Positions 28,910 through 64,000 of a stretch of 64,000 nucleotides of DNA are shown piece by piece. Position 1 is the first letter of the stretch; the number at the start of each line of letters is the position of its first letter. A program made the translations under genes and the position numbers. The notes beneath the pieces are model-generated. The model searched no databases, was not told the DNA's origin, and worked only from the letters and a program-made list of their open reading frames with translations. The DNA lies in IMG/VR virus record IMGVR_UViG_3300032322_001765, positions 156,868-220,867 of that record; one strand, given 5' to 3'.

Positions 28910-28917
28910 AGTAACAT

Positions 28918-29481: not shown

Positions 29482-29500
29482 ATTCTTTTTAAGGTGATAT

Positions 29501-29712: not shown

Positions 29713-29718
29713 AGTATT

Positions 29719-29793
29719 GCGGGTGTAATTCAGGGGTAGAATGTTTGCTTGCCAAGCAAAATGTCAGGAGTTCGAATCTCCTCACCCGCTCCA
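29719..29793 (+). tRNA. tRNA-Gly(GCC)
   Basis: TTTGC-TTGCCAA-GCAAA, CCA. Confidence 0.95.
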
Positions 29794-29809
29794 ATTTTAT
29801 ATAATTTTT

Positions 29810-31050: not shown

Positions 31051-31051
<1 letters not shown>
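29810..31051 (+). CDS. Methyltransferase fused to Fe(II)/2OG oxygenase
   Basis: N: VLEIGSLNING...CECFEH; C: GGGLHQI...IHVDFN...WHGHP; start moved to MAHQQQ because the track start lies in tRNA-Gly. Confidence 0.8.
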
Positions 31052-31140
<89 letters not shown>

Positions 31141-31180
31141 ACTATAGCTCTATTTTGTAAAATAATCACAGGAGGTAATT

Positions 31181-31741
31181 ATGCCAGCAAGTTTTTTAGT
31201 AAGCGACACACATTTCGGCCATGCTGGCGTATGCCGTTTCCTACGTGATGACGGTACGAAACTACGTCCATGGGATAACCCAGATGAAATGGATGAAGAA
31301 ATGGTAAAGCGTTGGAATGAAACAGTTCGACCCAATGATAAAGTTTATCATTTAGGAGATGTTGTGATTAACCGTAAAGCACTTGCCACACTTAGTCGCC
31401 TTAATGGTGATAAGGTGCTTATCAAAGGTAATCATGATATTTTTAAATTAGAAGAATACACACAATACTTTCGTGATGTCCGAGGCTACCATGTTATGAA
31501 TGGTATGATACTAAGTCATATACCTGTGCATGAAGAAAGTTTAGCACGATTTGGGACAAACATTCATGGACATCTGCATTATAACCGTGTAAAGAAAGAT
31601 GGTGTCATTGATGTTAGATATCATTGTGTTTGTGTAGAACAAACAGATTACCGTCCAATACTGTTTGAACATGTTATCAAACGTATTCAAGAAGAAGGTG
31701 GCACAGTTGGCTTTAAAAACGGTAACGGCCCTATCATGTAA
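31181..31741 (+). CDS. Calcineurin-like metallophosphoesterase
   Basis: SDTHFGH, HLGD, GNHD, SH, HGHLH. Confidence 0.9.
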   Translation: MPASFLVSDTHFGHAGVCRFLRDDGTKLRPWDNPDEMDEEMVKRWNETVRPNDKVYHLGDVVINRKALATLSRLNGDKVLIKGNHDIFKLEEYTQYFRDVRGYHVMNGMILSHIPVHEESLARFGTNIHGHLHYNRVKKDGVIDVRYHCVCVEQTDYRPILFEHVIKRIQEEGGTVGFKNGNGPIM

Positions 31742-31797
31742 TTTATGATAGGACCTTTTTTAGCATAAGTATCTTACTACATTTTTAAGGAGGCATC

Positions 31798-32979
31798 ATG
31801 GCTGGCCGCAATTTTCTATTTGTTCCAGGACCAACAAATATTCCCGATAGAGTTTTAAGAGCAATGGTAGTATCTATGGAAGATCATAGGTCACCTGATT
31901 TCCCTTCACTAACTCTTGAAATACTGCCAAAGTTAAAAAAACTTTTTCGCACAACAACAGGTACACCGTTTATATTCCCGTCTAGCGGCACAGGCTGTTG
32001 GGAAGCAGCACTTACAAATACTTTATCACCTGGCGACAAAATATTAGCAGCACGATTTGGACAATTCAGTCATCTATGGATTGAGATGTGCCAAAGGTTG
32101 GGATTTGAAGTCGAAATAGTTGATTGTGAATGGGGCACTGGTGTACCACTTGACATTTACAGAGATAAATTAGAAGCAGATACCGAACACAAAATTAAAG
32201 CTGTGTTAGTTACTCACAATGAAACAGCAACTGGTGTCACTTCAGATGTTGCAGGCGTACGCCGTATAATGAATAATGCAAATCATCCTGCAATGATATT
32301 TGTCGATGCAGTCTCATCATTTGCTAGTATTGATTTAAGATTTGATGAGTGGGGTATTGATATGTGTGTAACGGGATCTCAAAAAGGTCTTATGTTACCT
32401 GCAGGACTAGGTATTCTATGTGCAAGTGAAAGGGCATTAGAAATGCGCCACCTTGCAAAATCTAAAAGAGCATATTTTGATTTAAACGATATGTTAAATT
32501 CAAATAGAAACGGATACTTCCCGTATACCCCTGCTCTTTCGTTGTTATATGGATTAAAAGAATCACTCTGTATACTTGAGGAAGAAGGTTTAGATAATGT
32601 TATCAACAGACATAACTATCTTGCTTCGGGGGTACGTGCAGCAGTAGAAGGATGGGGACTAAAACTTTGTGCTAAGGATCCTAAATGGAATAGTAACACT
32701 GTTTCAGCTATTATGGTTCCGGAAGGCATTGACGCTGCAAAAGTAATATCAGCAGCATATAATCATTATAACTTATCTTTAGGTGCAGGATTAAATAAAG
32801 TTGCAGGCAAATTATTTAGAATTGGGCATTTAGGTGACATGAATGAGGTGCATTTGTTAGCCGCGATAGCAGGTGCAGAAATGGCCATGTTGGACGTTGG
32901 TATAAAAATAGAATCAGGTAGTGGGGTTGCCGCTGCAATTAATTATTATCGAATGCACAAAGGAACAGTCAATGTATAA
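31798..32979 (+). CDS. sgaA: Serine-glyoxylate / alanine-glyoxylate aminotransferase (class V PLP)
   Basis: MAGRNFLFVPGPTNIPDRVLRAM, SSGTGCWEAA, HNETATG, DAVSS, GSQKG, RIGHLG. Confidence 0.85.
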   Translation: MAGRNFLFVPGPTNIPDRVLRAMVVSMEDHRSPDFPSLTLEILPKLKKLFRTTTGTPFIFPSSGTGCWEAALTNTLSPGDKILAARFGQFSHLWIEMCQRLGFEVEIVDCEWGTGVPLDIYRDKLEADTEHKIKAVLVTHNETATGVTSDVAGVRRIMNNANHPAMIFVDAVSSFASIDLRFDEWGIDMCVTGSQKGLMLPAGLGILCASERALEMRHLAKSKRAYFDLNDMLNSNRNGYFPYTPALSLLYGLKESLCILEEEGLDNVINRHNYLASGVRAAVEGWGLKLCAKDPKWNSNTVSAIMVPEGIDAAKVISAAYNHYNLSLGAGLNKVAGKLFRIGHLGDMNEVHLLAAIAGAEMAMLDVGIKIESGSGVAAAINYYRMHKGTVNV

Positions 32980-33046
32980 AGTAGGTGAAGCAATTTTTTA
33001 TAGTTTAGTAGCAGTTTTTATTGTGGCATTTTTACTTACTATTTAA
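32972..33046 (+). CDS. Small hydrophobic peptide (24 aa)
   Basis: MYKVGEAIFYSLVAVFIVAFLLTI; AAGGA SD-like site. Confidence 0.4.
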   Translation: MYKVGEAIFYSLVAVFIVAFLLTI

Positions 33047-33049
33047 TAT

Positions 33050-33358
33050 TGTTGTATGAAACAATCCGAAACAGGTTCTGGACGGCGGTTCGATTCCGCC
33101 CATCTCCACCAAATGCAATCTTGGGATGATTATTTTCCGCCTTTGAATTTGTGGAACTATAGTATCAGTTGGCAATGGAAGATTTCATTTGATGGGGATG
33201 ATCAGGTCTCGACAGGGTCAAGAGTACGAGAGTGGACAACACGGTAGGCGATGACCGTAAATCAAGCAAAACTATAACTGCAAACGCAGCTAATGATGAG
33301 GTATACGCTCTAGCAGCGTGATCTCCGGGGCAACTATGCCTTGTTACCAAAAATAGTT
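33050..33358 (+). ncRNA. ssrA: Circularly permuted (two-piece) tmRNA; tag ANAANDEVYALAA
   Basis: 3' end GGTTCGATTCC...CATCTCCACCA (ends 33111) precedes 5' end GGGGATG (33194); G3.U70; tag ORF 33280-33321; outer ends approximate. Confidence 0.9.
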
Positions 33359-33359
33359 T

Positions 33360-33384
33360 AAAAGGCTACTTCGGTAGCCTTTTT
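33360..33384 (+). terminator. Intrinsic terminator
   Basis: AAAAGGCTAC-TTCG-GTAGCCTTTTT. Confidence 0.9.
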
Positions 33385-33403
33385 CCATTATAAATATACT
33401 ATT

Positions 33404-33988
33404 ATGATAGTTTATATACACGGCGCCAGCGCAACTAAAGATAGCTTTTCTTACATTAGACAATTTGTTAGAGATAATATAGAGTTACCTGATATCGCAT
33501 TAGAGTATAACAGTAGTGATGGGTTTGATTATAATATAGGCACTATGTTTGGTAGATTGGATGATGCTGAAAAACTATTTTTCGTTTCGCATAGTTTAGG
33601 TGGCATATACGCATTGCATTTAGCAAATCATTATAAAGATAGAACAATCGGTGGCGTTTCACTAAGTACTCCATACGGTGGATGTAGACAAGCAGATTTT
33701 GCTAGATATTTTTTACCTTTTAATAAGTTAATGAAAGATATTGGAACAATGTCAGATCCAATGATAGAGGCAAAGCGTTTACCTGCTCCTAAAAATTGGA
33801 CTAATGTTGTCACAACAAGAGGAGATAGTCCTTGGATACAAGAACCAAATGATGGAGTGGTTACTATTGAAAGCATGAAGTATCGTGCAGATTTTGAATT
33901 GGTTGAGGCAAATATTAACCATTATGAAGTTGTATTAAATCCAAACATTGTTGAACTTATTTTAGATAGAATTAAAAAAGCAATTTAA
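33404..33988 (+). CDS. Alpha/beta hydrolase
   Basis: YIHG, SHSLGG nucleophile elbow, NDGVV, distal H. Confidence 0.8.
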   Translation: MIVYIHGASATKDSFSYIRQFVRDNIELPDIALEYNSSDGFDYNIGTMFGRLDDAEKLFFVSHSLGGIYALHLANHYKDRTIGGVSLSTPYGGCRQADFARYFLPFNKLMKDIGTMSDPMIEAKRLPAPKNWTNVVTTRGDSPWIQEPNDGVVTIESMKYRADFELVEANINHYEVVLNPNIVELILDRIKKAI

Positions 33989-34012
33989 CCAAAACTCCAT
34001 TTATTTCTAATT

Positions 34013-34030
34013 TTGTAACATATCTGTAAT
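34013..34030 (+). promoter_or_regulatory. Pho box upstream of pstS
   Basis: TTGTAAC-ATAT-CTGTAAT, 11-nt period direct repeat matching the PhoB consensus. Confidence 0.7.
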
Positions 34031-34083
34031 ATTCTAACTTCTAAATATTTTTGTACACATGTACATTTTATCGGAGACAGAGT

Positions 34084-35106
34084 ATGAAAAAAATATTTGC
34101 ATTATTGGCGTTTGTGTCAACATTTGCATCAGCAGCAGAATTCACCGGAGCAGGAGCAACATTCCCGTTCCCAATCTATGCTAAGTGGGCTGAAGCATAC
34201 AAAGCACAAACTGGCATTGGTCTAAATTATCAATCAATTGGTAGTGGCGGTGGTATTCGTCAAATCAAAGCAAAGACGGTTGACTTTGGCGCAAGTGATA
34301 TGCCATTGAAAAAAGAAGAACTTGACAAAGAAGGTCTTGTACAATTTCCAGCAATCATCGGTGGTGTTGTACCAGTATTCAACCTAGACGGTATTGATGC
34401 TGGTAAATTAAAACTTACTCCAGATGTGATTGCTAATATTCATTTAGGTAAAATTAACAAATGGAATGACAAAGCAATTGCTGAATTAAATCCAGGAGTT
34501 GCTCTTCCTGCTATGAACATTACTGTAGTTCATCGTGCAGACGGTTCAGGTACTACATTTATCTGGACAAACTTTTTAGGCAAAGCAAATGCTGAATTTC
34601 AAAAAACAGTAGGCGAAGGCACAGCAGTTAAATGGCCAGTTGGTGTAGGCGGTAAAGGCAACGAAGGTGTAGCAGCACAAGTGCAAAGAATCAAAGGTGC
34701 ATTTGGTTATGTTGAGTATGCTTATGCTAAAAGAAACAAGATTCCTTATGCAGCGTTGAAAAATCGTGATGGTAACTTTGTACTACCAGATGATACTACA
34801 TTCAAAGCAGCCGCAGCTAATGCTGATTGGAACAATGCGCCAGGGATGTATTTGTTACTCACATGGCAGACAGGTAAAGATGCATGGCCAGCAACAGGTG
34901 CAAGTTTCATTCTAATGCACAAGCAACAGGCAGATACATTAACGGGTCGTGCAGTTCTCAAGTTCTTTGACTGGTCATACAAGAATGGTGGCCAAATGTC
35001 AACTGAGTTAGAGTATGTTCACATGCCAGCTGATGTAATTAAATTAGTTCAGGAAAATTGGAAGAAGGATTTCCGTGGTCCTGATGGTAACCCAATTTGG
35101 AAATAA
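34084..35106 (+). CDS. pstS: Phosphate ABC transporter substrate-binding protein PstS
   Basis: Signal peptide; GAGATFP, YQSIGSGGG, FGASD, RADGSGTT, GKGNEGV; GGAGA SD. Confidence 0.95.
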   Translation: MKKIFALLAFVSTFASAAEFTGAGATFPFPIYAKWAEAYKAQTGIGLNYQSIGSGGGIRQIKAKTVDFGASDMPLKKEELDKEGLVQFPAIIGGVVPVFNLDGIDAGKLKLTPDVIANIHLGKINKWNDKAIAELNPGVALPAMNITVVHRADGSGTTFIWTNFLGKANAEFQKTVGEGTAVKWPVGVGGKGNEGVAAQVQRIKGAFGYVEYAYAKRNKIPYAALKNRDGNFVLPDDTTFKAAAANADWNNAPGMYLLLTWQTGKDAWPATGASFILMHKQQADTLTGRAVLKFFDWSYKNGGQMSTELEYVHMPADVIKLVQENWKKDFRGPDGNPIWK

Positions 35107-35110
35107 ACAC

Positions 35111-35139
35111 TTGACAACCGTTAACACTGATGATACAAT
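35111..35139 (+). promoter_or_regulatory. Sigma70-type promoter overlapping an 11-bp inverted repeat
   Basis: TTGACA-17nt-TACAAT; AACCGTTAACA/TGTTAACGGTT plus T tract. Confidence 0.7.
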
Positions 35140-35166
35140 GTTAACGGTTTTTTATAAGGACACACA

Positions 35167-36573
35167 ATGAAAACATTAGGTAAATTAACTTTGGCTATTT
35201 CTTTAGCCTTCTCAGTTCCAGCATATGCTGATGAATATTTGAGTACATTAAATATTTTGCGAGACAAAGGTATCATTACAAAACAAGAGTATGATACTAA
35301 AGTACGTGATTATGAAGAAAAAGCAGAAAACAAAAAATTTGCAGAGCAACGAATCGACAAAGATGTTAGCGATTCAGTCAAATTTAGACAAGCAAGAGCA
35401 AACGACGGATCAGTTACAGAAAACGGATTTGGACTTAAATCCAAAGATGGAAACACGACTGCCCAATTTACAGGTCGATTACATATGGACTATCGTCAGT
35501 ACGACCCCAATTATGGTACAGGTCAAACCACGGATTCGTATCAGAACCTAGCAGAAGTTCGTCGTGCTAGATTTGGCGTACGTGGTCAATTTCAAAAAGA
35601 TTTCAAGTATCAACTACTTGCAAACTTTGGTAATGACGTAGGTGCTTCTGCTACTTCCAGTACCGCAGATGAGATGTGGGTTAACTATGCAGCCAATCCT
35701 GAAATGCAATTTCAGTTTGGTTTATTCAAAATGCCATTCAGCTTAGAGCAATTAACAAGTTCTAATAATATTGATTTTATGGAGCGTAGTTTAATTGGTA
35801 ACACTGATGGTGAGTTCATTCCTGCAAAAGAAACTGGATTCATGGTTCATGGTATACCTAAACCAGGTCTATTGTATCAAGTAGCATTAAGCCGTGGTCG
35901 TGCAAACAAAGATGCAACTAACGATGGTTTTGACTATATTGGTCGTGTAGTAACAAACGTTGCTGAACTACAAGGTAGCAAAGCATATGTATTACATTTA
36001 GGCGCTGCATACAGTATGGGTGATATCAAAGGTGGTGTTACACCAGCTAGTGGTAGAACAGAGGCTCGCACACAGTCAGCATGGTTTACAGGTCCTGCAT
36101 TATCTGGTACCACGACAAGAACTCGCCAAGGATTAGAAGCAGCATTTGCTTACAATGGTTTAAAGTTACAAGGCGAACAGTTTAATTTCAAGTATGATCC
36201 TACAACAGGTTCCGATCAAGAAATTAAAGGTTACTACGTACAAGCATTGTATAACTTAACAGGCGAAAGTCACAATTATAAAGACGGTATCTTTAACTGG
36301 ATTAAACCAAACAATCCAACAGATAAAGGTGGTCGCGGTGCATGGCAAGTTGGTGTGCGTATGAGTGAGTTTGATGCAAGTGGTATCACTGTTGTAACAG
36401 GCAAATCTAATCGTGCTACTGCCATGACATACGGAATTACTTGGTTTGCAACTGACAATTTACGCTTCATGCTCAACTATGTTGACACAAAGTTTGATTC
36501 GTTAGTAGGAAGTTCAGGTAGCCGTGTAAATGGTGACAGAGCAGTTATGTTTAGAAGCCAATTAAGTTTCTAA
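35167..36573 (+). CDS. Phosphate-selective porin, OprO/OprP family
   Basis: Signal peptide; GRLHMD, RRARFGVRG, GLFKMPFSLEQLTSS...FMERS, RYSE-like RMSEFD, C-terminal F. Confidence 0.85.
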   Translation: MKTLGKLTLAISLAFSVPAYADEYLSTLNILRDKGIITKQEYDTKVRDYEEKAENKKFAEQRIDKDVSDSVKFRQARANDGSVTENGFGLKSKDGNTTAQFTGRLHMDYRQYDPNYGTGQTTDSYQNLAEVRRARFGVRGQFQKDFKYQLLANFGNDVGASATSSTADEMWVNYAANPEMQFQFGLFKMPFSLEQLTSSNNIDFMERSLIGNTDGEFIPAKETGFMVHGIPKPGLLYQVALSRGRANKDATNDGFDYIGRVVTNVAELQGSKAYVLHLGAAYSMGDIKGGVTPASGRTEARTQSAWFTGPALSGTTTRTRQGLEAAFAYNGLKLQGEQFNFKYDPTTGSDQEIKGYYVQALYNLTGESHNYKDGIFNWIKPNNPTDKGGRGAWQVGVRMSEFDASGITVVTGKSNRATAMTYGITWFATDNLRFMLNYVDTKFDSLVGSSGSRVNGDRAVMFRSQLSF

Positions 36574-45601: not shown

Positions 45602-48600
45602 TTATCCAAAAGTTCCATTATTTCCTAACACTGTCCAAGCGCCCGATACTCTCAATAATGCAAAAGTAAATACGTCCCTCTTATTTGCATTACCGGTTGG
45701 TGTCACGCCACCCGGCCAGTTAATTGTTTGCGCCACACTATTTATCTGCACTGCATTTGGTATAAATCCTGTTGCGCCTTGGGTAATAACTATTGTTACA
45801 ACTATTGATCTATTATCAGTTGTTGGAACATTCGTAAAGTTTGCAGTAAAACTAGCCGCTACACTTGTGTGTACAAATATTAGTCCACCTGCTACATTAT
45901 GTGTTACTGTTCCCGTAGCCCCTGTTAGTGACTGCGTGACCTCAGTAAATTCTTGCGAAGTTATCCAACCAGTTACGCTCGCATCTCCGCTTACAGTTAA
46001 GCTTGCTAACGTACCAACACTGGTTATATTTGTTTGTGCTGCTGTAGTTAATGTACCAGTTAAGAAGTTACCACTAATTAGATTAGCACCTGAAATATTA
46101 CCAGCAGTAAAATTACCGGTATATGTTGGTAGATATGCAGCAACATTCGTATTAGAATATGAACTTCCGAAATTCCATGCAACTCCGTTAGCATATAATA
46201 AGTTATTTGTTAAGACATTACCCGCACTAACATTTGCGGTGACGCTTAAGCTTGATAACGTTCCGACAGTAGTAATATTTGGCTGTGCTGCTGTTGTTAA
46301 TGTGCCAGTCAATAAAGAAGCACTTACTAAGTTAGCACCGGTAATTTGTGATAAACTACCACTGAGTGTAACGTTCGAATTAGCTGCTATCGTAGTACTC
46401 TGTAATGTACCAACTGAGGTAATGTTGGGTTGCGCTGCTGTTGTCAATGCACCAGTCAATAAAGAAGCACTTACTAGATTAGCACCAGTTATTTGAGCTA
46501 AACTACCACTAAGCGTAATATTCGAATTAGCTGCTATCGTAGTACTTTGCAACGCACCTATCGAAGTAATATTTGGTTGGGCCCCTGTTATTAAGGTGCC
46601 TTGTAAGAAATTACCAATTACCAAATTACCTAAATTAGCATTATATGATGTAATATTACCAGTACCACTAGTACCAACGGTCAGATTTCCATAAATACCT
46701 GCGTCGCCTGCTCTGTTACCATATCTTGTTTCAATTGTTACAGTGCCTGTACTATCAAATATATTTGCGGTTCTAATGCCATTACTTGTTGCAATGATTA
46801 GCCCAGTAACAGTAAGTGAAGATAAAGTACCAACACTTGTTATATTAGGTTGTGCACCAGTAGTTAGTGTTCCTGTAAATAGGTTAGCTGAAATTACATT
46901 AGCACCTGTTAAATTACCTCCGCTACCACTACCCATTGTTAGTGTTCCTGCTACAGTGGCGTTTCCTGCACTGAAGTTTGCTGAAACATTAGCGTAACCC
47001 GTAACGTTAGCACCCGTACTTGTTAAAATTAAAACATTTGATGTGCCACCTACGCCTGCGGTAATATTACCACCAGAAGAGCCAATGTTAATATTACTAG
47101 TTCCATTTGAAATTGAAGAAACGCTAGCTGAAATGCCTGTCAGTAAAGATCCATTTCCAACGAAGAAATTAGCTGTTGCTGCATTTCCTAAGTTAGCATT
47201 TCCTGAACTAATATTACCTGTTACATTTAAACTTGTTAATGTACCAACACTAGTGATGTTTGGTTGTGCATTTGTATATACAGTACCGGCAACCAGTGCA
47301 TTACCCACCTGGCCACTTACATTGCTGCCGGTGATTGATGTTAACGTGCTTCCATTGCCAATAAAATAATTTGCTGCGACATTGCCTGTATAAGTTGGTA
47401 GATATGCTGCGACATTTGTATTAGAGTATGAACTACCAAAACTCCATGCAACTCCATTTGAATATAAGAGATTGTTTGTTAAAAGATTTCCGGCTGTAAC
47501 ATTACCTGTATAAGTTGGTAGATATGCTGCGACATTTGTATTAGAGTATGAACTACCAAAACTCCACGAAACTCCGTTTGCATACAACAAATTATCAGAT
47601 AATATGTTTCCTGCACTTACATTAGCGGTAACACTTAAACTTGACAATGTACCGAGTGAAGTAATATTGGGTTGTGCATTAGTATAGACCGTACCAGCAA
47701 CCAGTGCATTACCTACTTGACCTGTAACATTAGCACCAGTAATTGAAGTTAATGCACTTCCGTTGCCAATAAAATAATTTGCCGCAACATTGCCTGTATA
47801 AGTGGGTAAGTAAGCAGCAACGTTTGTATTTGAATACGAACTACCAAAACTCCATGCAATTCCATTAGCATAAAGTAAACTGTCCGTTAATATGTTACCT
47901 GCACTTATATTCGCAGTAACACTTAAGATAGATAATGTTCCTACTGAAGTAATATTTGGTTGTGCATTGGTGTAGACCGTACTAGCAACTAGTGCGTTTG
48001 CCACTTGACCATTTACATTACCGCCTGTAATAGAACTTAACAATGAACCATTTCCACTGAAGAAATTAGCTATTGCTAAATTACCTAAATTACTATTACC
48101 TGAACTAACATTACCAGTTACATTTAAGCTACTTAATGTTCCTAAACTAGTGATGTTCGGTTGTGCTGCTGTGTATACTGTGCCAGCTACTAATGCATTA
48201 GCCACCTGTCCTGTTACATTACCACCTGTGATACTTGTTAATAAACTTCCGTTACCTGAAAAGAAATTAGCTATTGCTAAATTACCTAAATTAGCATTAC
48301 CCGCAATTACGTTACCGGTAACAGTCAAACTTGATAAGGTGCCAACGCTGGTGATATTAGGTTGTGCATTTGTATACACTGTTCCTGCAACTAATGCATT
48401 ACCTACTTGGCCCGCTATGTTACTACCTGTGATACTTGTTAGTAAACTTCCATCTCCGCTAAAGAAGTTTGCTCTAGCTAAATTACCTAAGTTAGCATTA
48501 CCTGAACTAACATTACCAGTGACGGTTAAACTACTCAAAGTACCTAAACTTGTAATATTTGGTTGTGCATTTGTGTAAACAGTACCGGCTACTAATGCAT

Positions 48601-51094
48601 TTGCTACTTGACCAGTAACGTTAGCACCAGTAATTGATGTTAATGTACTCCCATTACCAATAAAATAATTTGCGGCAACATTACCCGTGTACGTTGGAAG
48701 ATATGCTGCGACATTTGTATTAGAGTATGAACTACCAAAACTCCATGCAACTCCATTAGCATAAAGTAAACTGTCCGTTAATATGTTACCTGCACTAACA
48801 TTAGCGGTAACACTTAAGCTTGATAACATCCCTACACTTGTTATGTTTGGTTGTGCTGATGTTGTTAATGTTCCCTGCAAGAAATTACCAATAACTAAAT
48901 TACCTAAATTAGCATTGTATGCAGTAATATTTCCTGTACCACTGGTACCAACGGTTAAATTTCCGTATATGCCGGCATCACCGGCTTTGTTACCATACTG
49001 TGTTTCAATTGTAAGTGTACCTGTACTATCGTAGATGTTTGCAGTTTTAACACCATTTGCTGTTGTTGTAATTAAACCTGTAACTGTTAACGATGATAAT
49101 GTTCCTAAACTTGTTATATTTGGTTGTGCAGCAGTATAAACAGTACCTGCAACTAATGCATTAGATACTTGACCTGTGACATTACCGCCTGTTATTGAAG
49201 TTAATGCGCTTCCGTTGCCGATAAAATAGCTTGCTGCAACATTACCTGTATAAGTCGGAAGATACGCAGCAACATTCGTATTTGAATATGTTGCTCCAAA
49301 ACTCCATGCAACTCCATTTGCATATAATAAATTATTTGTTAAAACATTACCGGCTGCAACATTGCCTGTATAAGTGGGTAAGTAAGCAGCAACGTTTGTA
49401 TTTGAATACGAACTACCAAAGCTGTAGGGTGAGCCATTTGCATATAATAAATTATCTGTTAACACATTACCGGCTGCAACATTACCTGTATAAGTCGGAA
49501 GATACGCAGCAACATTCGTATTTGAATATGTTGCTCCAAAACTCCATGCAACTCCATTTGCATAAAGTAAGTTGTTCGTTAAAACATTTCCTGCACTTAC
49601 ATTTGAAGTGACTGCTAGGTTTGCTAATGTACCTAGGCTTGTAATATTTGGCTGTGCATTTGTATAAACAGTACCAGCTACTAATGCATTACCTACTTGA
49701 CCAGTAACGTTAGCTCCTGTAATTGAAGATAATGCACTACCGTTTCCTATAAAATATCCTGCGCGGATATTACCAAAACTATTAAATGTTACTACTTCAC
49801 TAGCAACTGATACGTTGCTACCAAACGCAAATTCACCATTACTGTTGTCCCACCCCATAAATGCATCAATTGGGGCAGTAGTGTAGTAATGTAAGATTTC
49901 TCCTCTGTCTTTACCGTCATTAGTAGTTAATGCATTTCCATTAGGCCCACCTCCCATCTCAATGATAGGATCTTCTATTACTAACGACTCTACATTTATA
50001 TAAGTTACATTTCCGTTGACTGTTAAATTACCGGCAACAGTTGCATTTCCTGATACATTTAGATCAGTTGTATTGGCATTGATAGACACATTTAAACTTG
50101 TTAATGTACCTACACTTGTAATATTAGGTTGTGCTGCTGAATATACTGTACCCGAAACTAATGCGTTTCCTACTTGACCTACAACATTGCCACCTGTGAT
50201 GCTTGATAATAAAGAGCCATTCCCGCTGAAATAATTGGCTACTGCTAAGTTTCCTAAGTTTGCATTACCTGACTCTATGTTACCTGTTAATGCAATATCA
50301 GCTCCGGATGCTTGTATTTGGGCGCCACCGATAATAATAGAATTACCTGCAAGATACAAATCATTCCAACGATAATCATTATTACCTAAATTGTAGGTTA
50401 TATTAGAACTAGGTATTAAATTGCCAATAACATAGTTGGCAACTGATAAATTACCAACGTTGGCGTTTCCGGATACAGCAACATTTACTAGTGTACCTGT
50501 GCTTGTGATGTTAGGTTGCGCACTAAATTGAACCGTTCCAGCTACAATTGCCGCTTGAGCATATGTAGCGTTAGCAACTTCATTAATTACATTACTTCCG
50601 TTAATTACTGTTAATCCTATTCCGTTTCCAAAAATGTAATTTGCACTTATATTTCCATTATAGGTAGTAAGATAAGCACCTACATTAGTGTTAGAATAAA
50701 CAGTTCCTAAATTCCATGCGACCCCATTAGCGTATAATAAATTGTTTGTTAGAACATTTCCAGCTGAAACATTACCTGTATAAGTTGGAAGATAGTTTGC
50801 AACATCAGTGTTACTGTAAGTTCCTGAGATTCCGGTTAATAAAGCACCGTTTCCTATGAAATAATTTGCACTAACATTTCCAGCGTAAGTGGGTAGATAG
50901 TTTGCAACATCAGCATTACTATAAGTTCCTGCAATTCCGGTTAGTAAACTACCATTTCCTATGAAATAGTTTGCCGTAGCAGCGTTACCTAAATTTGCGT
51001 TACCCGAAGTAACGTTTCCGTTAACAGTTACATTTGCAAACGTGAAATTAGCAGAGGTGTTTACACCAGATGGTTCTAACCTTGTAAAAGACAT
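45602..51094 (-). CDS. 1830-aa repeat-rich fibre/adhesin-like protein
   Basis: Many AQPNITS(V/L)GTL.SL and YSNTNVAAYLPTY.GNV repeats; N/G/T/V/A-rich; TAAATA upstream. Confidence 0.8.
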   Translation of the reverse strand: MSFTRLEPSGVNTSANFTFANVTVNGNVTSGNANLGNAATANYFIGNGSLLTGIAGTYSNADVANYLPTYAGNVSANYFIGNGALLTGISGTYSNTDVANYLPTYTGNVSAGNVLTNNLLYANGVAWNLGTVYSNTNVGAYLTTYNGNISANYIFGNGIGLTVINGSNVINEVANATYAQAAIVAGTVQFSAQPNITSTGTLVNVAVSGNANVGNLSVANYVIGNLIPSSNITYNLGNNDYRWNDLYLAGNSIIIGGAQIQASGADIALTGNIESGNANLGNLAVANYFSGNGSLLSSITGGNVVGQVGNALVSGTVYSAAQPNITSVGTLTSLNVSINANTTDLNVSGNATVAGNLTVNGNVTYINVESLVIEDPIIEMGGGPNGNALTTNDGKDRGEILHYYTTAPIDAFMGWDNSNGEFAFGSNVSVASEVVTFNSFGNIRAGYFIGNGSALSSITGANVTGQVGNALVAGTVYTNAQPNITSLGTLANLAVTSNVSAGNVLTNNLLYANGVAWSFGATYSNTNVAAYLPTYTGNVAAGNVLTDNLLYANGSPYSFGSSYSNTNVAAYLPTYTGNVAAGNVLTNNLLYANGVAWSFGATYSNTNVAAYLPTYTGNVAASYFIGNGSALTSITGGNVTGQVSNALVAGTVYTAAQPNITSLGTLSSLTVTGLITTTANGVKTANIYDSTGTLTIETQYGNKAGDAGIYGNLTVGTSGTGNITAYNANLGNLVIGNFLQGTLTTSAQPNITSVGMLSSLSVTANVSAGNILTDSLLYANGVAWSFGSSYSNTNVAAYLPTYTGNVAANYFIGNGSTLTSITGANVTGQVANALVAGTVYTNAQPNITSLGTLSSLTVTGNVSSGNANLGNLARANFFSGDGSLLTSITGSNIAGQVGNALVAGTVYTNAQPNITSVGTLSSLTVTGNVIAGNANLGNLAIANFFSGNGSLLTSITGGNVTGQVANALVAGTVYTAAQPNITSLGTLSSLNVTGNVSSGNSNLGNLAIANFFSGNGSLLSSITGGNVNGQVANALVASTVYTNAQPNITSVGTLSILSVTANISAGNILTDSLLYANGIAWSFGSSYSNTNVAAYLPTYTGNVAANYFIGNGSALTSITGANVTGQVGNALVAGTVYTNAQPNITSLGTLSSLSVTANVSAGNILSDNLLYANGVSWSFGSSYSNTNVAAYLPTYTGNVTAGNLLTNNLLYSNGVAWSFGSSYSNTNVAAYLPTYTGNVAANYFIGNGSTLTSITGSNVSGQVGNALVAGTVYTNAQPNITSVGTLTSLNVTGNISSGNANLGNAATANFFVGNGSLLTGISASVSSISNGTSNINIGSSGGNITAGVGGTSNVLILTSTGANVTGYANVSANFSAGNATVAGTLTMGSGSGGNLTGANVISANLFTGTLTTGAQPNITSVGTLSSLTVTGLIIATSNGIRTANIFDSTGTVTIETRYGNRAGDAGIYGNLTVGTSGTGNITSYNANLGNLVIGNFLQGTLITGAQPNITSIGALQSTTIAANSNITLSGSLAQITGANLVSASLLTGALTTAAQPNITSVGTLQSTTIAANSNVTLSGSLSQITGANLVSASLLTGTLTTAAQPNITTVGTLSSLSVTANVSAGNVLTNNLLYANGVAWNFGSSYSNTNVAAYLPTYTGNFTAGNISGANLISGNFLTGTLTTAAQTNITSVGTLASLTVSGDASVTGWITSQEFTEVTQSLTGATGTVTHNVAGGLIFVHTSVAASFTANFTNVPTTDNRSIVVTIVITQGATGFIPNAVQINSVAQTINWPGGVTPTGNANKRDVFTFALLRVSGAWTVLGNNGTFG

Positions 51095-58981: not shown

Positions 58982-59431
58982 ATGTGGATACTATCAATTA
59001 CACCCGTTTGGGTCTTTCATGCAATTACTTTAGCAGGAATCATTGGAATCATATCAGGTTTCTTGCTAGCCTTCATTCCTTTTATAAGACAATATAAACT
59101 TCCAATCCAAGTTATCAGTATTGTATTATTAGTCTCTGGAATTTTTATGGAAGGGGCTATGCTTAACGAGCAAGTTTGGTTGCTAAAAGTAGCTGAAATG
59201 GAACAGAAAATGGCTGAGGCAGAAGCCAAATCAGCACAAGAAAATGTTAAATTAGTTGAAAAAATTGTAGTTAAGAAAGAGTACATTAAATCTCGCGGTC
59301 GTGATATTGTAAAATATATTGACAAAGAAATCGTAAAATATGATTCAAAGTTTGCAGCCGGCGGGCAATGCGAAATTCCTAAAGAATTCTATAAAGCAAT
59401 AAATGATGCTGCGCAGGAGCCAAACAAATGA
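58982..59431 (+). CDS. Putative inner-membrane spanin (Rz-like)
   Basis: N-terminal TM segments then coiled coil; followed by lipoprotein. Confidence 0.55.
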   Translation: MWILSITPVWVFHAITLAGIIGIISGFLLAFIPFIRQYKLPIQVISIVLLVSGIFMEGAMLNEQVWLLKVAEMEQKMAEAEAKSAQENVKLVEKIVVKKEYIKSRGRDIVKYIDKEIVKYDSKFAAGGQCEIPKEFYKAINDAAQEPNK

Positions 59432-59694
59432 AAAAAATAGTAATTATTTCTATGCTATTATTAACAGGATGCTCAACAGTAGTGCCTGTAAAAGCTAAAT
59501 TCCCTGAGGCACCTGACATGCTAATGACTAAGTGCCCAGCACTGACGCAGGTTAAAGAAGATGCTAAGTTAAGTGAAATTGCAACTTCAGTAGCGAATAA
59601 CTACACAACTTATTATGAGTGTGCAGTTATTGCTAGGGGTTGGCAAGACTGGTATCAGATACAGAAGAATATTTACGAAAACGCTGGTAAGTAA
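59428..59694 (+). CDS. Putative outer-membrane lipoprotein spanin (Rz1-like)
   Basis: MKKIVIISMLLLTGC lipobox; Pro-rich FPEAP...CP.L. Confidence 0.6.
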   Translation: MKKIVIISMLLLTGCSTVVPVKAKFPEAPDMLMTKCPALTQVKEDAKLSEIATSVANNYTTYYECAVIARGWQDWYQIQKNIYENAGK

Positions 59695-60180: not shown

Positions 60181-60957
60181 ATGACTATAACCGTAGCAAA
60201 CATTGATATTGGTGACTTACCCAATGACGGAACGGGTGATCCGTTACGAATTGCATTTGAAAAAATCAATCAAAACTTTATTGATTTAGCAAATGGTTTA
60301 CCTGCAGGACCAGAAGGATCGTTCCAATATAATGCAAACGGTGAAAGCAACGGTACCGCAAACTTTACATATGTTGAGGCTAACAACACCATACGATTAG
60401 GTGCAAACATATTACCAATTAGTAACACACTAACTATAGGTACAGTTGCAAACACAGTTGCCAATCTTTATGTAGGTAATTCAGGATTCTACGTTGGTAA
60501 TATCAATGTCGTAGAGTCAGGAAACATACTTAGTTTCCCTATTCGTGTATTACCAAGTGCAAAAGCAAGTTTTGCCATTAACAATCTTAATGCAGATGGC
60601 AATATAACAGCGAACGGGTCACTATCTGTTAGTAATCTAAAGTTCGGTGGATTCACAGCGAATACATCAAATAATGCAGCCGATCAAATAATTTTTGAAT
60701 ATCCAGCTACAGCGTTTAAAACAGGTAAAGTTGTTTTGAAAACGACACAAAATGACGATGTGCAAACTGCTACCATTGACATAACTAAAGCAGGAACTAA
60801 CGCAACAGCTAATTTTAGTGTATATGGTACAATATTCATTGGAGCACCATTAACAAACTATGAAGTTGACATTGGATATGGAAATATAAGATTGAAGGTA
60901 AGTCCATTGTTAAATACACTGATGGTGCATGAAGGCACATATCAAATTACAGGTTAA
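60181..60957 (+). CDS. Virion structural protein with T4 gp9/gp10-like N-terminus
   Basis: IDIGDLPNDGTGDPLRIAFEKINQNF. Confidence 0.7.
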   Translation: MTITVANIDIGDLPNDGTGDPLRIAFEKINQNFIDLANGLPAGPEGSFQYNANGESNGTANFTYVEANNTIRLGANILPISNTLTIGTVANTVANLYVGNSGFYVGNINVVESGNILSFPIRVLPSAKASFAINNLNADGNITANGSLSVSNLKFGGFTANTSNNAADQIIFEYPATAFKTGKVVLKTTQNDDVQTATIDITKAGTNATANFSVYGTIFIGAPLTNYEVDIGYGNIRLKVSPLLNTLMVHEGTYQITG

Positions 60958-62095: not shown

Positions 62096-62377
62096 ATGAC
62101 CTTTGACGTATGGAAACAATCTAAATTACAGAACGGTCTTGATAAACTCAAGACCGTTTCCTTGCCCGACCACCAATCTGATAACCTAGAGGATATTAAG
62201 CGTCTAGCTGGTATAAACAATGTTGAAAAATTAGCAAACGAAATGAACATGAGTTATACAGGAACTGAAAAAGCAAGACTAATGAAAAAACATAATATCC
62301 AACCGGGTACCCCTGAGTGGTTTCAACTTTGGTTCAGTTTACCCAAGCTCACTGGTGAGAAACCTGTAGATAAATAA
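62096..62377 (+). CDS. Hypothetical protein
   Basis: IKRLAGI, IQPGTPEWFQLWF; TAAATA 4 nt upstream. Confidence 0.75.
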   Translation: MTFDVWKQSKLQNGLDKLKTVSLPDHQSDNLEDIKRLAGINNVEKLANEMNMSYTGTEKARLMKKHNIQPGTPEWFQLWFSLPKLTGEKPVDK

Positions 62378-62381: not shown

Positions 62382-62654
62382 ATGAGAGCAACTGAATTCA
62401 TAAGGCAACTACTTGATCTAATAGACAATGTAAGTGATACAGCCGACGATAAAAAAGATTACGAATTAGAAACCACAGAAGATTGTGGGTGTAACGACGG
62501 ACAGGCTGAATACAGCAACAGCCCCAAAGAACAATATACAAGTAATGATACTATTATGAGTATGGGTAATGACATTAATATGCCAAAACATCCAGCTGAT
62601 ATTAGAGTCTCATCGGTTGCTTTATATCCAGAAGCTGCCTACAAAGGTAAATAA
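62382..62654 (+). CDS. Acidic hypothetical protein
   Basis: MRATEFIRQLLDLID; TAAATA 5 nt upstream. Confidence 0.75.
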   Translation: MRATEFIRQLLDLIDNVSDTADDKKDYELETTEDCGCNDGQAEYSNSPKEQYTSNDTIMSMGNDINMPKHPADIRVSSVALYPEAAYKGK

Positions 62655-62657: not shown

Positions 62658-63095
62658 ATGGCTTCCATTAATATTACTGTGCAAAGCTTATTAAATGCAG
62701 CACAATATGATCCTTACACAGTGGATGATACGACTACTGTAGGTACATTTAAATCGACTATTGAATCAGCGACCGGATGCAATGTATCATGGTTTAGTTT
62801 AGTCTTTAATAATCAAGAACTGAATACCGCAAACACACTAGCATCTTATTCAATCGTAAATAATTCAATGTTAAGAACAGCAAATAAAATAGCTAGATTA
62901 ACTACACTAGAGGATCGACAAAAAGGTAAATTAAATTTGTCTCAATTAGAAAGATTAGATTTATCGAATCCAAGGCCGTATTATGATATAGAAGAATTAC
63001 CTACTCAGTACAGTGGAAATACAATTGTTGACAATCCAAACCCAGGTGGGCTAATAGAAGGCAGACCTTGGGTAGACACACCACCAGGACCATAA
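62658..63095 (+). CDS. Ubiquitin-like domain protein with C-terminal extension
   Basis: Residues 22-72 align without gaps to ubiquitin 17-67 (14 identities); no terminal GG. Confidence 0.75.
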   Translation: MASINITVQSLLNAAQYDPYTVDDTTTVGTFKSTIESATGCNVSWFSLVFNNQELNTANTLASYSIVNNSMLRTANKIARLTTLEDRQKGKLNLSQLERLDLSNPRPYYDIEELPTQYSGNTIVDNPNPGGLIEGRPWVDTPPGP

Positions 63096-63096: not shown

Positions 63097-64000
63097 ATGC
63101 CATCAGTACCAGATCCAGCCAATGTAAAGCCTTGGTATCTTAGAAACATAACAGAAGCACTAGCACTTGATGAGGCTAGTGGTAATGTTTATGTTCGCAC
63201 TGGCTTTACTGGAAACATTATTATTGAAGGTAATGTAAGTATTCCAGGCACAATAACAGTAAACAGTTCTCCTGAAGATCCAGTGCATGTTCATTTAGAT
63301 GAAATAGGCACAAGTGGAATACTTGATGTGCCTTATCTTCCTGTTAGTGTTGTCGGCAACATTGCAAACATAACAGGCAATGTTAATGTAACGCAAGGAA
63401 CTGTTCCTTGGTCAGTGTCAGGCAATGTCAATGCTAACATTACTGGTGGAAATGTTAGCATTACCGGTAATATTGCAGGTATAACAAGTAATGTAACAAT
63501 AGTTGACGGCGGCGGAAGTATTACAGTAGATGGCAATGTGGGTATTACTGGAAATGTTAACATTGGCACCATGCCTAATGTTAATGCTAATATTACTGGT
63601 GGTAATGTTACAGTCAGTCAAGGTACAACACCTTGGTCTGTGTCAGGTAATGTAAATGCGAATGTAACTGGCGGTAATGTATCTGTTACTGGAAGTGTAA
63701 ATGCAAATGTTACGGGAGGCAATGTCAGCATTACAGGCAACATTGCAGGCATTACTTCATTACCTAATATACAAGCAAACATAACAGGTGGTAATGTAAG
63801 TGTCACTGGTAATGTAAATGCGAATGTAACTGGCGGTAATGTAACAGTCACTCAAGGCACAACACCTTGGTCAATTAGTGGTAATGTTAATGCTACTCTC
63901 AACAGCAATGCTAATGTAGTTATTTCGGGATTCAGTGGAGCAACTTCTGATGCATTTGGTCGTTTAAGGGTAAGTGAACCATATACATTATTTGATACTA
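63097..64000 (+). CDS. Asn/Gly/Val/Thr-rich repeat virion protein (partial, runs off window end)
   Basis: Own translation MPSVPDPANVKPWYLRNITEAL...; GNVNANITGGNV and QGTTPWSVSGNV repeats; DAFGRLRVSEPYTLFD. Confidence 0.8.
   Translation, partial: MPSVPDPANVKPWYLRNITEALALDEASGNVYVRTGFTGNIIIEGNVSIPGTITVNSSPEDPVHVHLDEIGTSGILDVPYLPVSVVGNIANITGNVNVTQGTVPWSVSGNVNANITGGNVSITGNIAGITSNVTIVDGGGSITVDGNVGITGNVNIGTMPNVNANITGGNVTVSQGTTPWSVSGNVNANVTGGNVSVTGSVNANVTGGNVSITGNIAGITSLPNIQANITGGNVSVTGNVNANVTGGNVTVTQGTTPWSISGNVNATLNSNANVVISGFSGATSDAFGRLRVSEPYTLFDT

What the first reader, a model, noticed from the sequence alone, without database searches (positions are those of the whole stretch)
62658..63095. Eukaryote-like ubiquitin domain in a late phage gene
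Seen: residues 22-72 align without gaps to ubiquitin 17-67, with identities at V17, T22, K27, I30, G35, L43, F45, L50, T55, L56, Y59, I61, S65 and L67, plus the IxVxS/TL first strand. This is much closer to ubiquitin than to ThiS/MoaD. There is no C-terminal GG; a 70-aa tail ends ...LPTQYSGNTIVDNPNPGGLIEGRPW. It lies among virion genes behind TAAATA. Established: bacterial Bil/Bub systems conjugate ubiquitin-like proteins, and Bil targets phage tail proteins. Inference: a non-conjugatable decoy or inhibitor of such defences, or a structural/adaptor domain.
Basis: partly seen in the sequence, partly recalled or inferred. Interest (0 to 1): 0.75.

Follow-up and report, generated by a model that had tools for sequence, protein, structure and literature searches.

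The report
Phage protein built on captured ubiquitin
An uncultured giant phage of bacteria encodes a small protein whose front half descends from real eukaryotic ubiquitin, stripped of the tail needed for tagging and welded to a module that probably fixes it to the virus particle beside a tail-fibre-like protein.

Summary
ORF 62658-63095 (+) encodes 145 aa. Residues 19-72 hit Pfam ubiquitin above its curated cut-off, and the AlphaFold model of residues 1-77 superposes on ubiquitin at 1.1-1.3 A.

The protein is the diverged end (about 26% identity) of a large family found only in uncultured phages. Other members begin MQIFV and are up to 66% identical to eukaryotic ubiquitin, with intermediates in between. 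Every member lacks LRLRGG.

The 70-aa "tail" is a conserved module of its own. In relatives it occurs without ubiquitin, as the extreme N-terminus of proteins carrying variable lectin-like domains, at the same locus next to a modular fibre gene and the large terminase.

The most likely role is a non-conjugated, virion-associated adaptor or decoration protein. This is inferred, not shown. The anti-Bil decoy idea has no support: there is no conjugation tail, no E1/E2/JAB among the 37 window proteins scanned, and no PADLOC match. "Late gene behind TAAATA" is unsupported. No cultured phage carries the family, and I found no paper describing it.

The parts
62658..63095 (+). Gene for the 145-aa two-module protein (ubiquitin-derived domain plus anchor module)
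   Evidence: ORF. At least 141 90%-identity clusters of 138-146 aa with full-length coverage. 239 relatives in IMG/VR.
62658..62879 (+). Residues 1-74: ubiquitin-derived beta-grasp domain. It carries the family motif VQSLL in the beta1-beta2 loop and has no LRLRGG.
   Evidence: Pfam PF00240 above cut-off. Fold match to ubiquitin. Chain of intermediates to members 60-66% identical to ubiquitin.
62880..63071 (+). Residues 75-138: conserved 'anchor' module. It has an invariant N76, helix 84-101, a beta-hairpin at 116-125 and an invariant GRPW at 135-138.
   Evidence: Invariant columns in A1 and A2. Occurs alone as the extreme N-terminus of many proteins with variable C-terminal domains. No Pfam, PHROG or solved-structure match.
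63072..63092 (+). Residues 139-145 (VDTPPGP): remnant of the Pro-rich linker. In fused relatives this linker leads into a distal domain.
   Evidence: P0121 (69% identical) continues GRPW-VDTPP... into a PA14/GLEYA domain. Other fusions have Pro-rich linkers at the same point.
63097..64000 (+). Downstream fibre-like gene, cut off by the end of the contig. It has an N-terminal docking-type segment, then GNVNANITGG beta-helix-like repeats, then the start of a phrog_1645 'virion structural protein' domain.
   Evidence: Translation. 46% identical to the 740-aa protein of L001, whose C-terminal domain hits phrog_1645 at E 7e-106 and cyanophage 'virion structural protein' genes. The window ends where contig IMGVR_UViG_3300032322_001765 ends.
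62382..62654 (+). p90: small acidic protein (MRATEFIRQLLDLID...PADIRV), a conserved neighbour of the ubiquitin-anchor gene
   Evidence: Found beside the gene in two different phage groups. Co-occurs with ubiquitin-bearing anchors in 41/54 cases against 11/49 for anchors without ubiquitin, uncorrected for relatedness.
62096..62377 (+). p92: small protein (...GTPEWFQLWF...), a conserved upstream neighbour of the cassette
   Evidence: Syntenic in L001, L004, L006 and many IMG/VR loci. No family match.

Best explanation
The gene encodes a small two-module protein of an uncultured jumbo phage of bacteria. By TerL, the phage's nearest cultured relatives are PA5oct, Atu_ph07 and Phosso.

Module 1 (residues 1-74) is a strongly diverged descendant of genuine eukaryote-type ubiquitin. 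A phage lineage captured it, it lost the LRLRGG conjugation tail, and it gained a fixed VQSLL beta1-beta2 loop. These points are shown.

Module 2 (residues 75-138) is a conserved helix, hairpin and GRPW module. In relatives it sits at the very N-terminus of proteins whose C-terminal parts are variable lectin/adhesin-type domains. This is also shown.

By the usual logic of phage fibres and decoration proteins (conserved N-terminus binds the particle, variable C-terminus faces outward), module 2 is most likely a virion-attachment or adaptor module. This step is inferred.

In this phage the distal domain is not fused. It is supplied by the separate fibre-like gene that starts 1 nt after the stop codon. 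The 145-aa protein would then act as an adaptor or decoration subunit, with the ubiquitin domain serving as a stable, non-conjugated protein-protein interaction or folding domain. That domain may pack on the anchor, dock the fibre's conserved N-terminal segment, or both. All of this is inferred.
For: Ubiquitin descent:
- Pfam PF00240 above cut-off.
- Fold match at TM 0.84-0.94 and Z 14.8.
- Subfamily members begin MQIFVQSLL..LEVEPSDSIENVK.KIQD...DGRTLSDYNIQKE.
- They are 59-62% to 66% (42/64) identical to eukaryotic ubiquitin, and score 40.7-60.9 bits on PF00240.
- Graded intermediates lead to the window type.
- Rooted on eukaryotic ubiquitin, the ubiquitin-like members lie nearest the root and the window type forms one derived side (weak support).

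No conjugation tail:
- There is no GG at the end of the beta-grasp in any member. The G at position 130 of the later 'GG' is variable.

Anchor modularity:
- 54 proteins have the module at their N-terminus without ubiquitin.
- C-terminal partners include Laminin_G_3, PA14/GLEYA, Calx-beta, ILEI and Gly_rich_2.
- A Pro-rich linker follows GRPW.

Synteny:
- The order MTase, p92, (p90), [ubiquitin-anchor or anchor-LamG], fibre, TerL recurs in L001, L004, L006 and IMG/VR loci.
- The fibre's C-terminal domain is phrog_1645 'virion structural protein'.
- In PA5oct the two genes just upstream of TerL are annotated as proteomics-detected (ESI-MS/MS) structural proteins.

Complementarity, among 76 distinct genes:
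- Ubiquitin-bearing anchors mostly lack a C-terminal domain (26/35) and are followed by a separate fibre with a conserved N-terminal segment (23/35).
- Anchors without ubiquitin mostly carry their own C-terminal domain (27/41) and rarely have that fibre (8/41). Fisher p = 6e-5 and 6e-4, uncorrected for relatedness.

Packing:
- The anchor models at pLDDT 87-96 together with the ubiquitin domain, but at 68.7 on its own. This is consistent with the two parts packing against each other.
Against: - No virion proteomics exists and no cultured relative carries the family, so presence in the particle is untested.
- The anchor has no sequence or structural relative among known fibre anchors.
- Some ubiquitin-anchor genes are followed directly by TerL with no fibre between them (L021-26, L029), so a fibre partner is not obligatory.
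- The co-occurrence statistics ignore shared ancestry.
- The anchor tree is unresolved, so gain and loss of the ubiquitin domain cannot be ordered.
- The difference in model confidence may partly reflect different alignments.
Confidence: 0.55

Rival explanations
1. It is a fibre or tail assembly factor that is not part of the mature particle. It would work like lambda tail assembly protein I, a ubiquitin-like domain plus small C-terminal domain encoded just upstream of the host-specificity fibre gene J. It would act on the downstream fibre during assembly and then leave.
For: - The architecture is the same (beta-grasp plus small C-terminal domain), as is the position immediately upstream of a fibre-like gene.
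- TAPI is reported not to be incorporated into the mature tail (PMC1779556).
- Most ubiquitin-bearing members are small stand-alone proteins (26/35).
Against: - The same anchor module is covalently joined to lectin/adhesin-type domains in many relatives. That fits a displayed protein better than a transient chaperone.
- There is no Lambda_tail_I Pfam match, no conserved Gly at the end of the beta-grasp, no Gly-rich linker and no JAB/NlpC neighbour.
- Some members have no adjacent fibre.
Confidence: 0.2
2. It is a counter-defence protein: a non-conjugatable ubiquitin mimic that binds and blocks the E1/E2/deubiquitinase of bacterial ubiquitin-like defence systems (Bil, Bub, CBASS Cap2/Cap3).
For: - It is a ubiquitin-fold protein without a conjugatable end.
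- Bil systems are reported to target phage tail proteins.
Against: - The ubiquitin domain derives from eukaryotic ubiquitin, not from bacterial Bil/Bub ubiquitin-like proteins.
- PADLOC gives no meaningful match.
- The domain is always welded to the anchor module, which also exists without it and with lectin domains. It lies in a structural cassette.
- The ubiquitin domain evolves fast, from 66% down to below 20% identity to ubiquitin, except for one loop. That is unlike a mimic held to a fixed target surface.
Confidence: 0.08
3. The ubiquitin domain is displayed on the particle to engage eukaryotic ubiquitin-binding machinery. This could apply if the bacterial host lives inside or on protists, or if the particles are taken up by grazers.
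For: - The origin from eukaryotic ubiquitin implies physical proximity of the phage lineage to eukaryotes or their viruses at some point.
- The least diverged members keep most of the ubiquitin sequence up to residue 64.
Against: - The canonical L8-I44-H68-V70 recognition patch is not conserved across the family.
- The window's own copy is only about 26% identical to ubiquitin.
- The phage carries typical genes for a free-living Gram-negative host: an OprO/P-type porin, PstS and spanin-like genes.
Confidence: 0.05

Closest known systems
Eukaryotic ubiquitin and ubiquitin-like (UBL) domains, Pfam PF00240
   Same: The beta-grasp fold is the same (rmsd 1.1-1.3 A). The profile match is above the curated cut-off. 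Family members reach 59-66% identity and begin MQIFV.
   Different: There is no LRLRGG tail and no free C-terminus. The domain is permanently fused to another module. The beta1-beta2 loop has a 2-residue insertion and a fixed VQSLL motif. The I44 patch is not conserved. The window copy is only about 26% identical to ubiquitin.
BfUbb, the eukaryote-like ubiquitin of Bacteroides fragilis (PMC5705921)
   Same: It is a ubiquitin of eukaryotic type acquired by a prokaryotic lineage. It lacks the terminal glycine and so cannot be conjugated.
   Different: BfUbb is a free, secreted, ubiquitin-sized toxin of a bacterium. Here the domain is the N-terminal part of a phage protein in a structural cassette. 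It has diversified into hundreds of variants and has no signal peptide.
Ubiquitin genes of eukaryotic viruses (baculovirus v-ubi, giant viruses, pestivirus insertions)
   Same: A virus has captured cellular ubiquitin. These were the next-best structural matches in BFVD after the family's own members.
   Different: Those viruses infect eukaryotes, which have ubiquitin machinery. This is a tailed phage of bacteria: it has an OprO/P-type porin, a tmRNA and spanin-like genes, and relatives carry a peptidoglycan-binding endolysin.
Lambda/T1 tail assembly protein I (TAPI; Iyer et al. 2006, PMC1779556)
   Same: It is a phage protein with an N-terminal ubiquitin-fold domain and a small C-terminal domain, encoded just upstream of the fibre gene.
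   Different: TAPI's domain is ThiS/MoaD-like with a conserved C-terminal Gly and a Gly-rich linker, and it is partnered with a JAB/NlpC peptidase. None of these features is present here, and there is no Pfam match.
Separate adaptor proteins derived from fibre N-terminal anchors (T7 gp17 N-domain; gp37 of K1-5/SP6-like phages). Recalled from the literature, not tested here.
   Same: The logic is the same. A conserved particle-binding module can be fused to the distal receptor-binding part, or split off as a small adaptor onto which interchangeable fibres dock by a short conserved N-terminus (pattern).
   Different: No sequence or structural similarity was found. The attachment site on the particle is unknown. 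None of those adaptors carries a ubiquitin domain.

Membership tests
Ubiquitin family domain (PF00240) | Profile match above the curated gathering score | tested here: met
   32.8 bits against a cut-off of 25.4, residues 19-72. Relatives score 33.3-60.9 bits.
Ubiquitin family domain (PF00240) | Beta-grasp fold superposable on ubiquitin | tested here: met
   pLDDT 92. Target-normalised TM 0.84-0.94, rmsd 1.1-1.7 A. Z 14.8.
Ubiquitin family domain (PF00240) | Homology to ubiquitin proper, shown through intermediates | tested here: met
   Members reach 66% identity to ubiquitin, with graded intermediates to the window type.
Conjugatable ubiquitin-like modifiers (ubiquitin, NEDD8, SUMO; bacterial Bil/Bub ubiquitin-like proteins) | C-terminal Gly or Gly-Gly, exposed or exposable directly after the beta-grasp | tested here: not met
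   The beta-grasp runs into ...LRTANKIARL. No Gly is present at the junction in 33 aligned members or in the ubiquitin-like subfamily. In the later 'GG' at 130-131, position 130 is variable.
Conjugatable ubiquitin-like modifiers (ubiquitin, NEDD8, SUMO; bacterial Bil/Bub ubiquitin-like proteins) | Encoded with E1, E2 and a JAB/DUB enzyme | tested here: inconclusive
   None was found among 10 + 27 window proteins scanned with Pfam or in called genes of L001, L004, L170 and L172. Only 64 kb of a genome of at least 221 kb was visible, and the ORFs at 1-24 kb were not scanned.
Conjugatable ubiquitin-like modifiers (ubiquitin, NEDD8, SUMO; bacterial Bil/Bub ubiquitin-like proteins) | Match to defence-system protein models | tested here: not met
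   PADLOC gave only a 12.8-bit, E 0.028 hit to an unrelated candidate family. The ubiquitin-like members gave no hit.
Lambda tail assembly protein I (TAPI, Lambda_tail_I) | ThiS/MoaD-like ubiquitin-fold domain with a conserved C-terminal Gly, a Gly-rich linker and the TAPI-C domain | tested here: not met
   No such Pfam match at E<=10. No conserved Gly or Gly-rich linker. Features taken from PMC1779556.
Lambda tail assembly protein I (TAPI, Lambda_tail_I) | Flanked by a JAB+NlpC/P60 protein (K) and the fibre gene (J) | tested here: not met
   A fibre-like gene lies downstream. The upstream neighbours are small unknown proteins and a methyltransferase, with no peptidase.
Virion-anchoring N-terminal module of phage fibre/decoration proteins (functional class) | Conserved N-terminal module joined to variable distal domains among relatives | tested here: met
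Virion-anchoring N-terminal module of phage fibre/decoration proteins (functional class) | Encoded in a structural or packaging gene cluster next to fibre genes | tested here: met
Virion-anchoring N-terminal module of phage fibre/decoration proteins (functional class) | Physically present in the particle and bound to a defined virion protein | not testable with these tools
   No cultured member exists and no complex prediction was available.
BfUbb-type free prokaryotic ubiquitin | Stand-alone protein of ubiquitin size, about 60% identical to ubiquitin, and secreted | tested here: not met
   The domain is always fused to the anchor (208 of 208 ubiquitin-bearing proteins). The window copy is about 26% identical to ubiquitin.

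The most novel reading that the evidence does not exclude
Tailed bacteriophages captured a eukaryotic ubiquitin gene and domesticated it as a permanent surface or assembly domain of the virion. The captured domain keeps a ubiquitin-specific activity: it recognises, or is recognised by, ubiquitin-binding or ubiquitin-like conjugation machinery. That machinery could be bacterial ubiquitin-like defence systems or eukaryotic cells that meet the phage. The domain would then be a functional ubiquitin mimic, not just a convenient fold.
Probability: 0.12. Interest if true: 0.9.

Novelty: new variant of a known kind. Interest (0 to 1): 0.72.

Why it matters
Ubiquitin of eukaryotic type is almost unknown outside eukaryotes and their viruses. 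BfUbb of Bacteroides fragilis is the textbook exception.

Here a whole family of uncultured phages carries a ubiquitin-derived domain. The family has at least 239 loci in IMG/VR and more than 140 protein clusters. Its members range from 66% down to below 20% identity to ubiquitin, and every one is fused at the same junction to a putative virion-anchor module.

This matters for three reasons:
- It shows gene flow from eukaryotes, or from their viruses, into tailed phages of bacteria.
- It is a natural series showing how ubiquitin evolves once freed from the conjugation system. Only the beta1-beta2 loop stays fixed.
- It reveals a new, widespread and unannotated N-terminal module of phage fibre- or decoration-type proteins. 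That module could help annotate receptor-binding genes in jumbo-phage metagenomes.

If the domain still talks to ubiquitin-like machinery, it would bear on the newly found bacterial ubiquitin-like defences.

Tried and rejected
- **T4-type late promoter.** TATAAATA occurs 3 times in the window against 14.3 expected. The local TAAATA overlaps the upstream stop codon. Rejected as evidence of late expression.
- **Programmed frameshift or read-through joining the gene to the fibre.** The frame offset is +1 in the window and L004 but +2 in L001. The gaps range from -1 to 122 nt. There is no conserved relation, so this is rejected.
- **The 'GG' at residues 130-131 as a hidden processing or conjugation site.** Position 130 is variable (G/S/T/D/N), and the site lies 55 residues beyond the beta-grasp. 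Rejected.
- **A prohead-protease LxE site at LIE-GRPW.** The E is not conserved; Q, N, T, K, L, V and A all occur. Rejected.
- **Cultured relatives.** megablast and tblastn of the protein, the anchor, p92 and the fibre N-terminus against 50,697 phage records gave no match.
- **PHROGs for the protein.** No family matched.
- **Cellular homologues.** There are none in 185,579 species genomes, apart from two MAG contigs that look like binned phage DNA.
- **Fold of the anchor.** The anchor alone models at only pLDDT 68.7, so it was not searched. No PDB, AFDB or BFVD match outside the family extends beyond residue ~90 at low rmsd; longer alignments have rmsd near 9 A or more.
- **Tree of the anchor module, to order gain and loss of ubiquitin.** It is unresolved (70 columns).
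- **Donor of the ubiquitin.** Too few informative sites remain to say.
- **p90 as a strict partner of the ubiquitin domain.** It is enriched (41/54 against 11/49) but not strict, and the count is not corrected for relatedness.

Full report
**1. The observation**

ORF 62658-63095 on the + strand encodes a 145-aa protein.

- Pfam's ubiquitin model (PF00240) matches residues 19-72 at 32.8 bits, above its curated cut-off of 25.4. Rad60-SLD comes second, and no ThiS/MoaD model appears even at E<=10.
- phmmer against PDB sequences aligns residues 21/22-74 to ubiquitin 16/17-69 without gaps.
- An AlphaFold2 model built on 33 homologues has mean pLDDT 92.3 and pTM 0.82.
- Residues 1-77 of the model superpose on ubiquitin with target-normalised TM 0.84-0.94 at 1.1-1.7 A, and Z up to 14.8 in a Foldseek-independent search.

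The resemblance is therefore real and far beyond chance.

There are two corrections. First, the protein ends ...GRPWVDTPPGP, not ...GRPW. Second, the 'TAAATA' overlaps the stop codon of the upstream ORF, and the T4 late-promoter octamer is rarer in this window than chance predicts (3 against 14.3). 'Late gene' is therefore not established.

**2. What genome this is**

The window is the last 64 kb of the IMG/VR contig IMGVR_UViG_3300032322_001765 (220,867 bp). The fibre-like gene that starts at 63097 is cut off by the contig end.

Syntenic relatives lie on contigs of 98 to 359 kb. Their gene order is MoxR ATPase, VWA protein, ThyA, epimerase, spanin-like pair, nuclease, methyltransferase, two small proteins (p92, p90), this gene, a fibre-like gene, TerL, then gp32- and UvsX-like genes.

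TerL of these relatives is about 52% identical to that of Pseudomonas jumbo phage PA5oct. It is 50-54% identical to those of Sinorhizobium phage Phosso and Agrobacterium phage Atu_ph07.

The window also carries 27 tRNA genes, a tmRNA, a PstS-like gene, an OprO/P-type porin and a spanin-like pair. This is a jumbo phage of a Gram-negative bacterium.

No cultured phage in a 50,697-record collection has the gene, its tail module, or its small neighbour p92.

**3. The domain descends from true ubiquitin**

A search of 5.8 billion proteins found at least 141 clusters of 138-146 aa that align over the full length. An exhaustive HMMER scan found 468 representatives, some of them eukaryotic polyubiquitins.

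One MAG contig (L168) and a subfamily typified by P0170, P0275 and P0315 have a far more ubiquitin-like first half:

- They begin MQIFVQSLL. They continue ...LEVEPSDSIENVK.KIQD... and ...DGRTLSDYNIQKE, then pass into the tail module.
- These members are 59-62% identical to eukaryotic ubiquitins, and up to 42/64 = 66%.
- They hit single ubiquitin chains in PDB at about E 2e-10.
- They score 40.7-60.9 bits on PF00240.

In one alignment the family forms a graded series from ubiquitin to the window protein. The window protein is 25.7% identical to ubiquitin over 70 columns. Bridging forms exist, such as P0206, which starts MQILVQTLLN yet has the window-type TWFEL.

All members share three derived traits:

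- VQS(L/F)L with a two-residue insertion, where ubiquitin has VKTLTG.
- Loss of LRLRGG.
- The same junction to the tail module, at an invariant Asn.

A tree rooted on eukaryotic ubiquitin places the ubiquitin-like members nearest the root (0.45-1.0 changes per site). The window type forms one derived side (1.3-4.6; the window protein at 1.58). Support is weak.

The simplest reading is one capture of a ubiquitin gene followed by rapid divergence. The donor cannot be identified from so few sites.

The contigs with the ubiquitin-like members are phage-like. They encode a peptidoglycan-binding endolysin, HNH endonuclease, DNA ligase and ClpP, and place a beta-solenoid 'Ice_binding' protein two genes downstream.

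The family is absent from 185,579 species-representative bacterial and archaeal genomes. The exceptions are two MAG contigs, one binned with Crocinitomicaceae and one with Fischerella.

**4. The 'tail' is a module in its own right**

Residues 75-138 hold most of the invariant positions of the protein: N76, Q88, K91, L114, P115, N126, G131 and G135-R-P-W138.

The same module occurs without any ubiquitin domain, as the extreme N-terminus (M-A-x-N-G-I-S-T-L...) of many proteins. Of 268 proteins with the module, 54 start with it and 208 have a ubiquitin-sized prefix.

After GRPW comes a Pro-rich linker and then highly variable domains: Laminin_G_3, PA14/GLEYA, Calx-beta, ILEI and Gly_rich_2. The ubiquitin-bearing form can carry such domains too, for example P0121, P0122, P0125, P0130 and P0141. 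The window protein keeps only the first residues of that linker (VDTPP, as in P0121).

In L006 an anchor-LamG protein sits in exactly the slot that the ubiquitin-anchor gene occupies here, between p92 and TerL.

The module has no Pfam or PHROG family and no solved structural relative. It models confidently together with the ubiquitin domain (pLDDT 87-96) but only at 68.7 on its own.

**5. The neighbourhood**

The downstream gene has three parts: a short N-terminal segment, a variable run of beta-helix-like repeats, and the beginning of a C-terminal domain.

In the full-length relative, that C-terminal domain hits phrog_1645 'virion structural protein' at E 7e-106. It also matches genes annotated 'virion structural protein' in many T4-like cyanophages.

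Across loci, the N-terminal ~40 residues of this fibre are conserved (...NST.Y.HP.E.NLLNLHKAM...). The middle and C-terminal parts are swapped, which is the hallmark of a modular fibre that docks by its N-terminus.

Among 76 distinct anchor genes with enough flanking sequence:

| | No C-terminal domain of their own | Followed by the modular fibre |
|---|---|---|
| Ubiquitin-bearing anchors (35) | 26 | 23 |
| Anchors without ubiquitin (41) | 14 (27 carry their own domain) | 8 |

Fisher p is 6e-4 for the first contrast and 6e-5 for the second. These counts ignore relatedness and are only suggestive.

Some ubiquitin-anchor genes are followed directly by TerL.

A small acidic protein (p90) accompanies the gene in two different phage groups.

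In PA5oct, the two genes just upstream of TerL are structural proteins found by mass spectrometry, according to that record's annotation. They are not detectably homologous to the genes here.

**6. Mechanism**

Shown:

- The domain derives from ubiquitin and has the beta-grasp fold.
- It has no conjugation tail.
- It is fused to a conserved module.
- That module carries variable lectin-type domains in relatives.
- The gene sits in a conserved cassette with a modular fibre gene next to TerL.

Inferred:

- The module fixes its bearer to the virion, or to another virion protein. This follows the usual rule that fibre and decoration proteins are conserved at the particle-proximal N-terminus and variable at the distal end.
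- The 145-aa protein is a split-off adaptor or decoration subunit.
- The ubiquitin domain is a permanent interaction or folding domain. Its only family-wide invariant surface is the VQSLL loop.

I put this at about 0.55.

The main rival is an assembly factor that stays out of the particle, like lambda protein I (0.2). That protein shares the layout of a ubiquitin fold plus a small domain upstream of a fibre gene. It differs in every defining sequence feature.

- There is no E1/E2/JAB among 37 window proteins scanned.
- PADLOC gives no match.
- The domain comes from eukaryotic ubiquitin, not bacterial ubiquitin-like proteins.
- The domain drifts fast, which does not fit a mimic of a fixed target.

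**7. Novelty**

Known precedents are ubiquitin genes in viruses of eukaryotes, BfUbb in Bacteroides fragilis and the ThiS/MoaD-like domain of lambda protein I.

Six full-text searches found no paper describing a ubiquitin-derived domain in tailed phages or this anchor module. UniProt/BFVD holds members only as uncharacterised proteins of 'uncultured Caudovirales phage'. Some JGI records mislabel them as ubiquitin-ribosomal-protein fusions.

I rate it a new variant of a known kind, and of high interest. The function remains unproven.

Noticed in passing
window 24148-31140 (+) and 33019-33412 (+): A tRNA island with 27 tRNA genes covering most amino acids. It is followed by a permuted (two-piece) tmRNA with tag peptide ANAANDEVYALAA. 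The tmRNA type might hint at the host group.
   Followed up: no
window 34051-35106 (+) and 35167-36573 (+): Adjacent phosphate-uptake genes. One is a PstS-like phosphate-binding protein (phrog_5385). The other is an OprO/OprP-type phosphate-selective porin (Pfam Porin_O_P E 2e-52; PDB 4rjw/2o4v E about 5e-20). A phage-encoded outer-membrane phosphate porin is unusual.
   Followed up: partly
window 45602-51094 (-): A 1830-aa protein with six stretches matching a PHROG tail-fibre family (phrog_6942, E 2e-37). It is a second, very large fibre-like gene on the opposite strand.
   Followed up: no
window 58982-59431 and 59428-59694 (+): An overlapping pair that looks like spanins. The first is a membrane-anchored coiled protein. 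The second is an 88-aa lipoprotein with an LLTGCS lipobox and a weak LysC/Rz1-like match.
   Followed up: no
window 1-24000 versus 24000-36000: G+C is 0.31-0.33 in the first 24 kb, a run of tightly overlapping ORFs mostly on the minus strand that was not annotated here. It is 0.38-0.40 in the tRNA and auxiliary-gene region.
   Followed up: no
window 60181-60957 (+): Only the first ~40 residues of this 258-aa protein (…GDLPNDGTGDPLRIAFEKINQNF…) match a PHROG family (phrog_8859). It may be another protein with a conserved N-terminal docking segment and a variable remainder.
   Followed up: no
window 62382-62654 (+); L172 9700-9999; L170 10432-10719: A small acidic protein (MRA.E/DLIR.LLD.LD ... 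PADIRV) lies next to the ubiquitin-anchor gene in two otherwise different phage groups. It is enriched near ubiquitin-bearing anchors. Its function is unknown.
   Followed up: partly
L168 (MAG Crocinitomicaceae, JBDNIA010000195.1) and L169 (MAG Fischerella, JANZYY010000012.1): These are the only two hits to the anchor module in 185,579 species genomes, and both are short MAG contigs with phage-like content. They are probably binned phage DNA, and they offer weak host hints (Bacteroidota, Cyanobacteria).
   Followed up: partly
P0293, P0298, P0304 (JGI records): Source annotations call ubiquitin-like family members 'ubiquitin-large subunit ribosomal protein L40e' or 'ribosomal protein S27Ae'. 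These are automatic mislabels caused by the ubiquitin part.
   Followed up: yes
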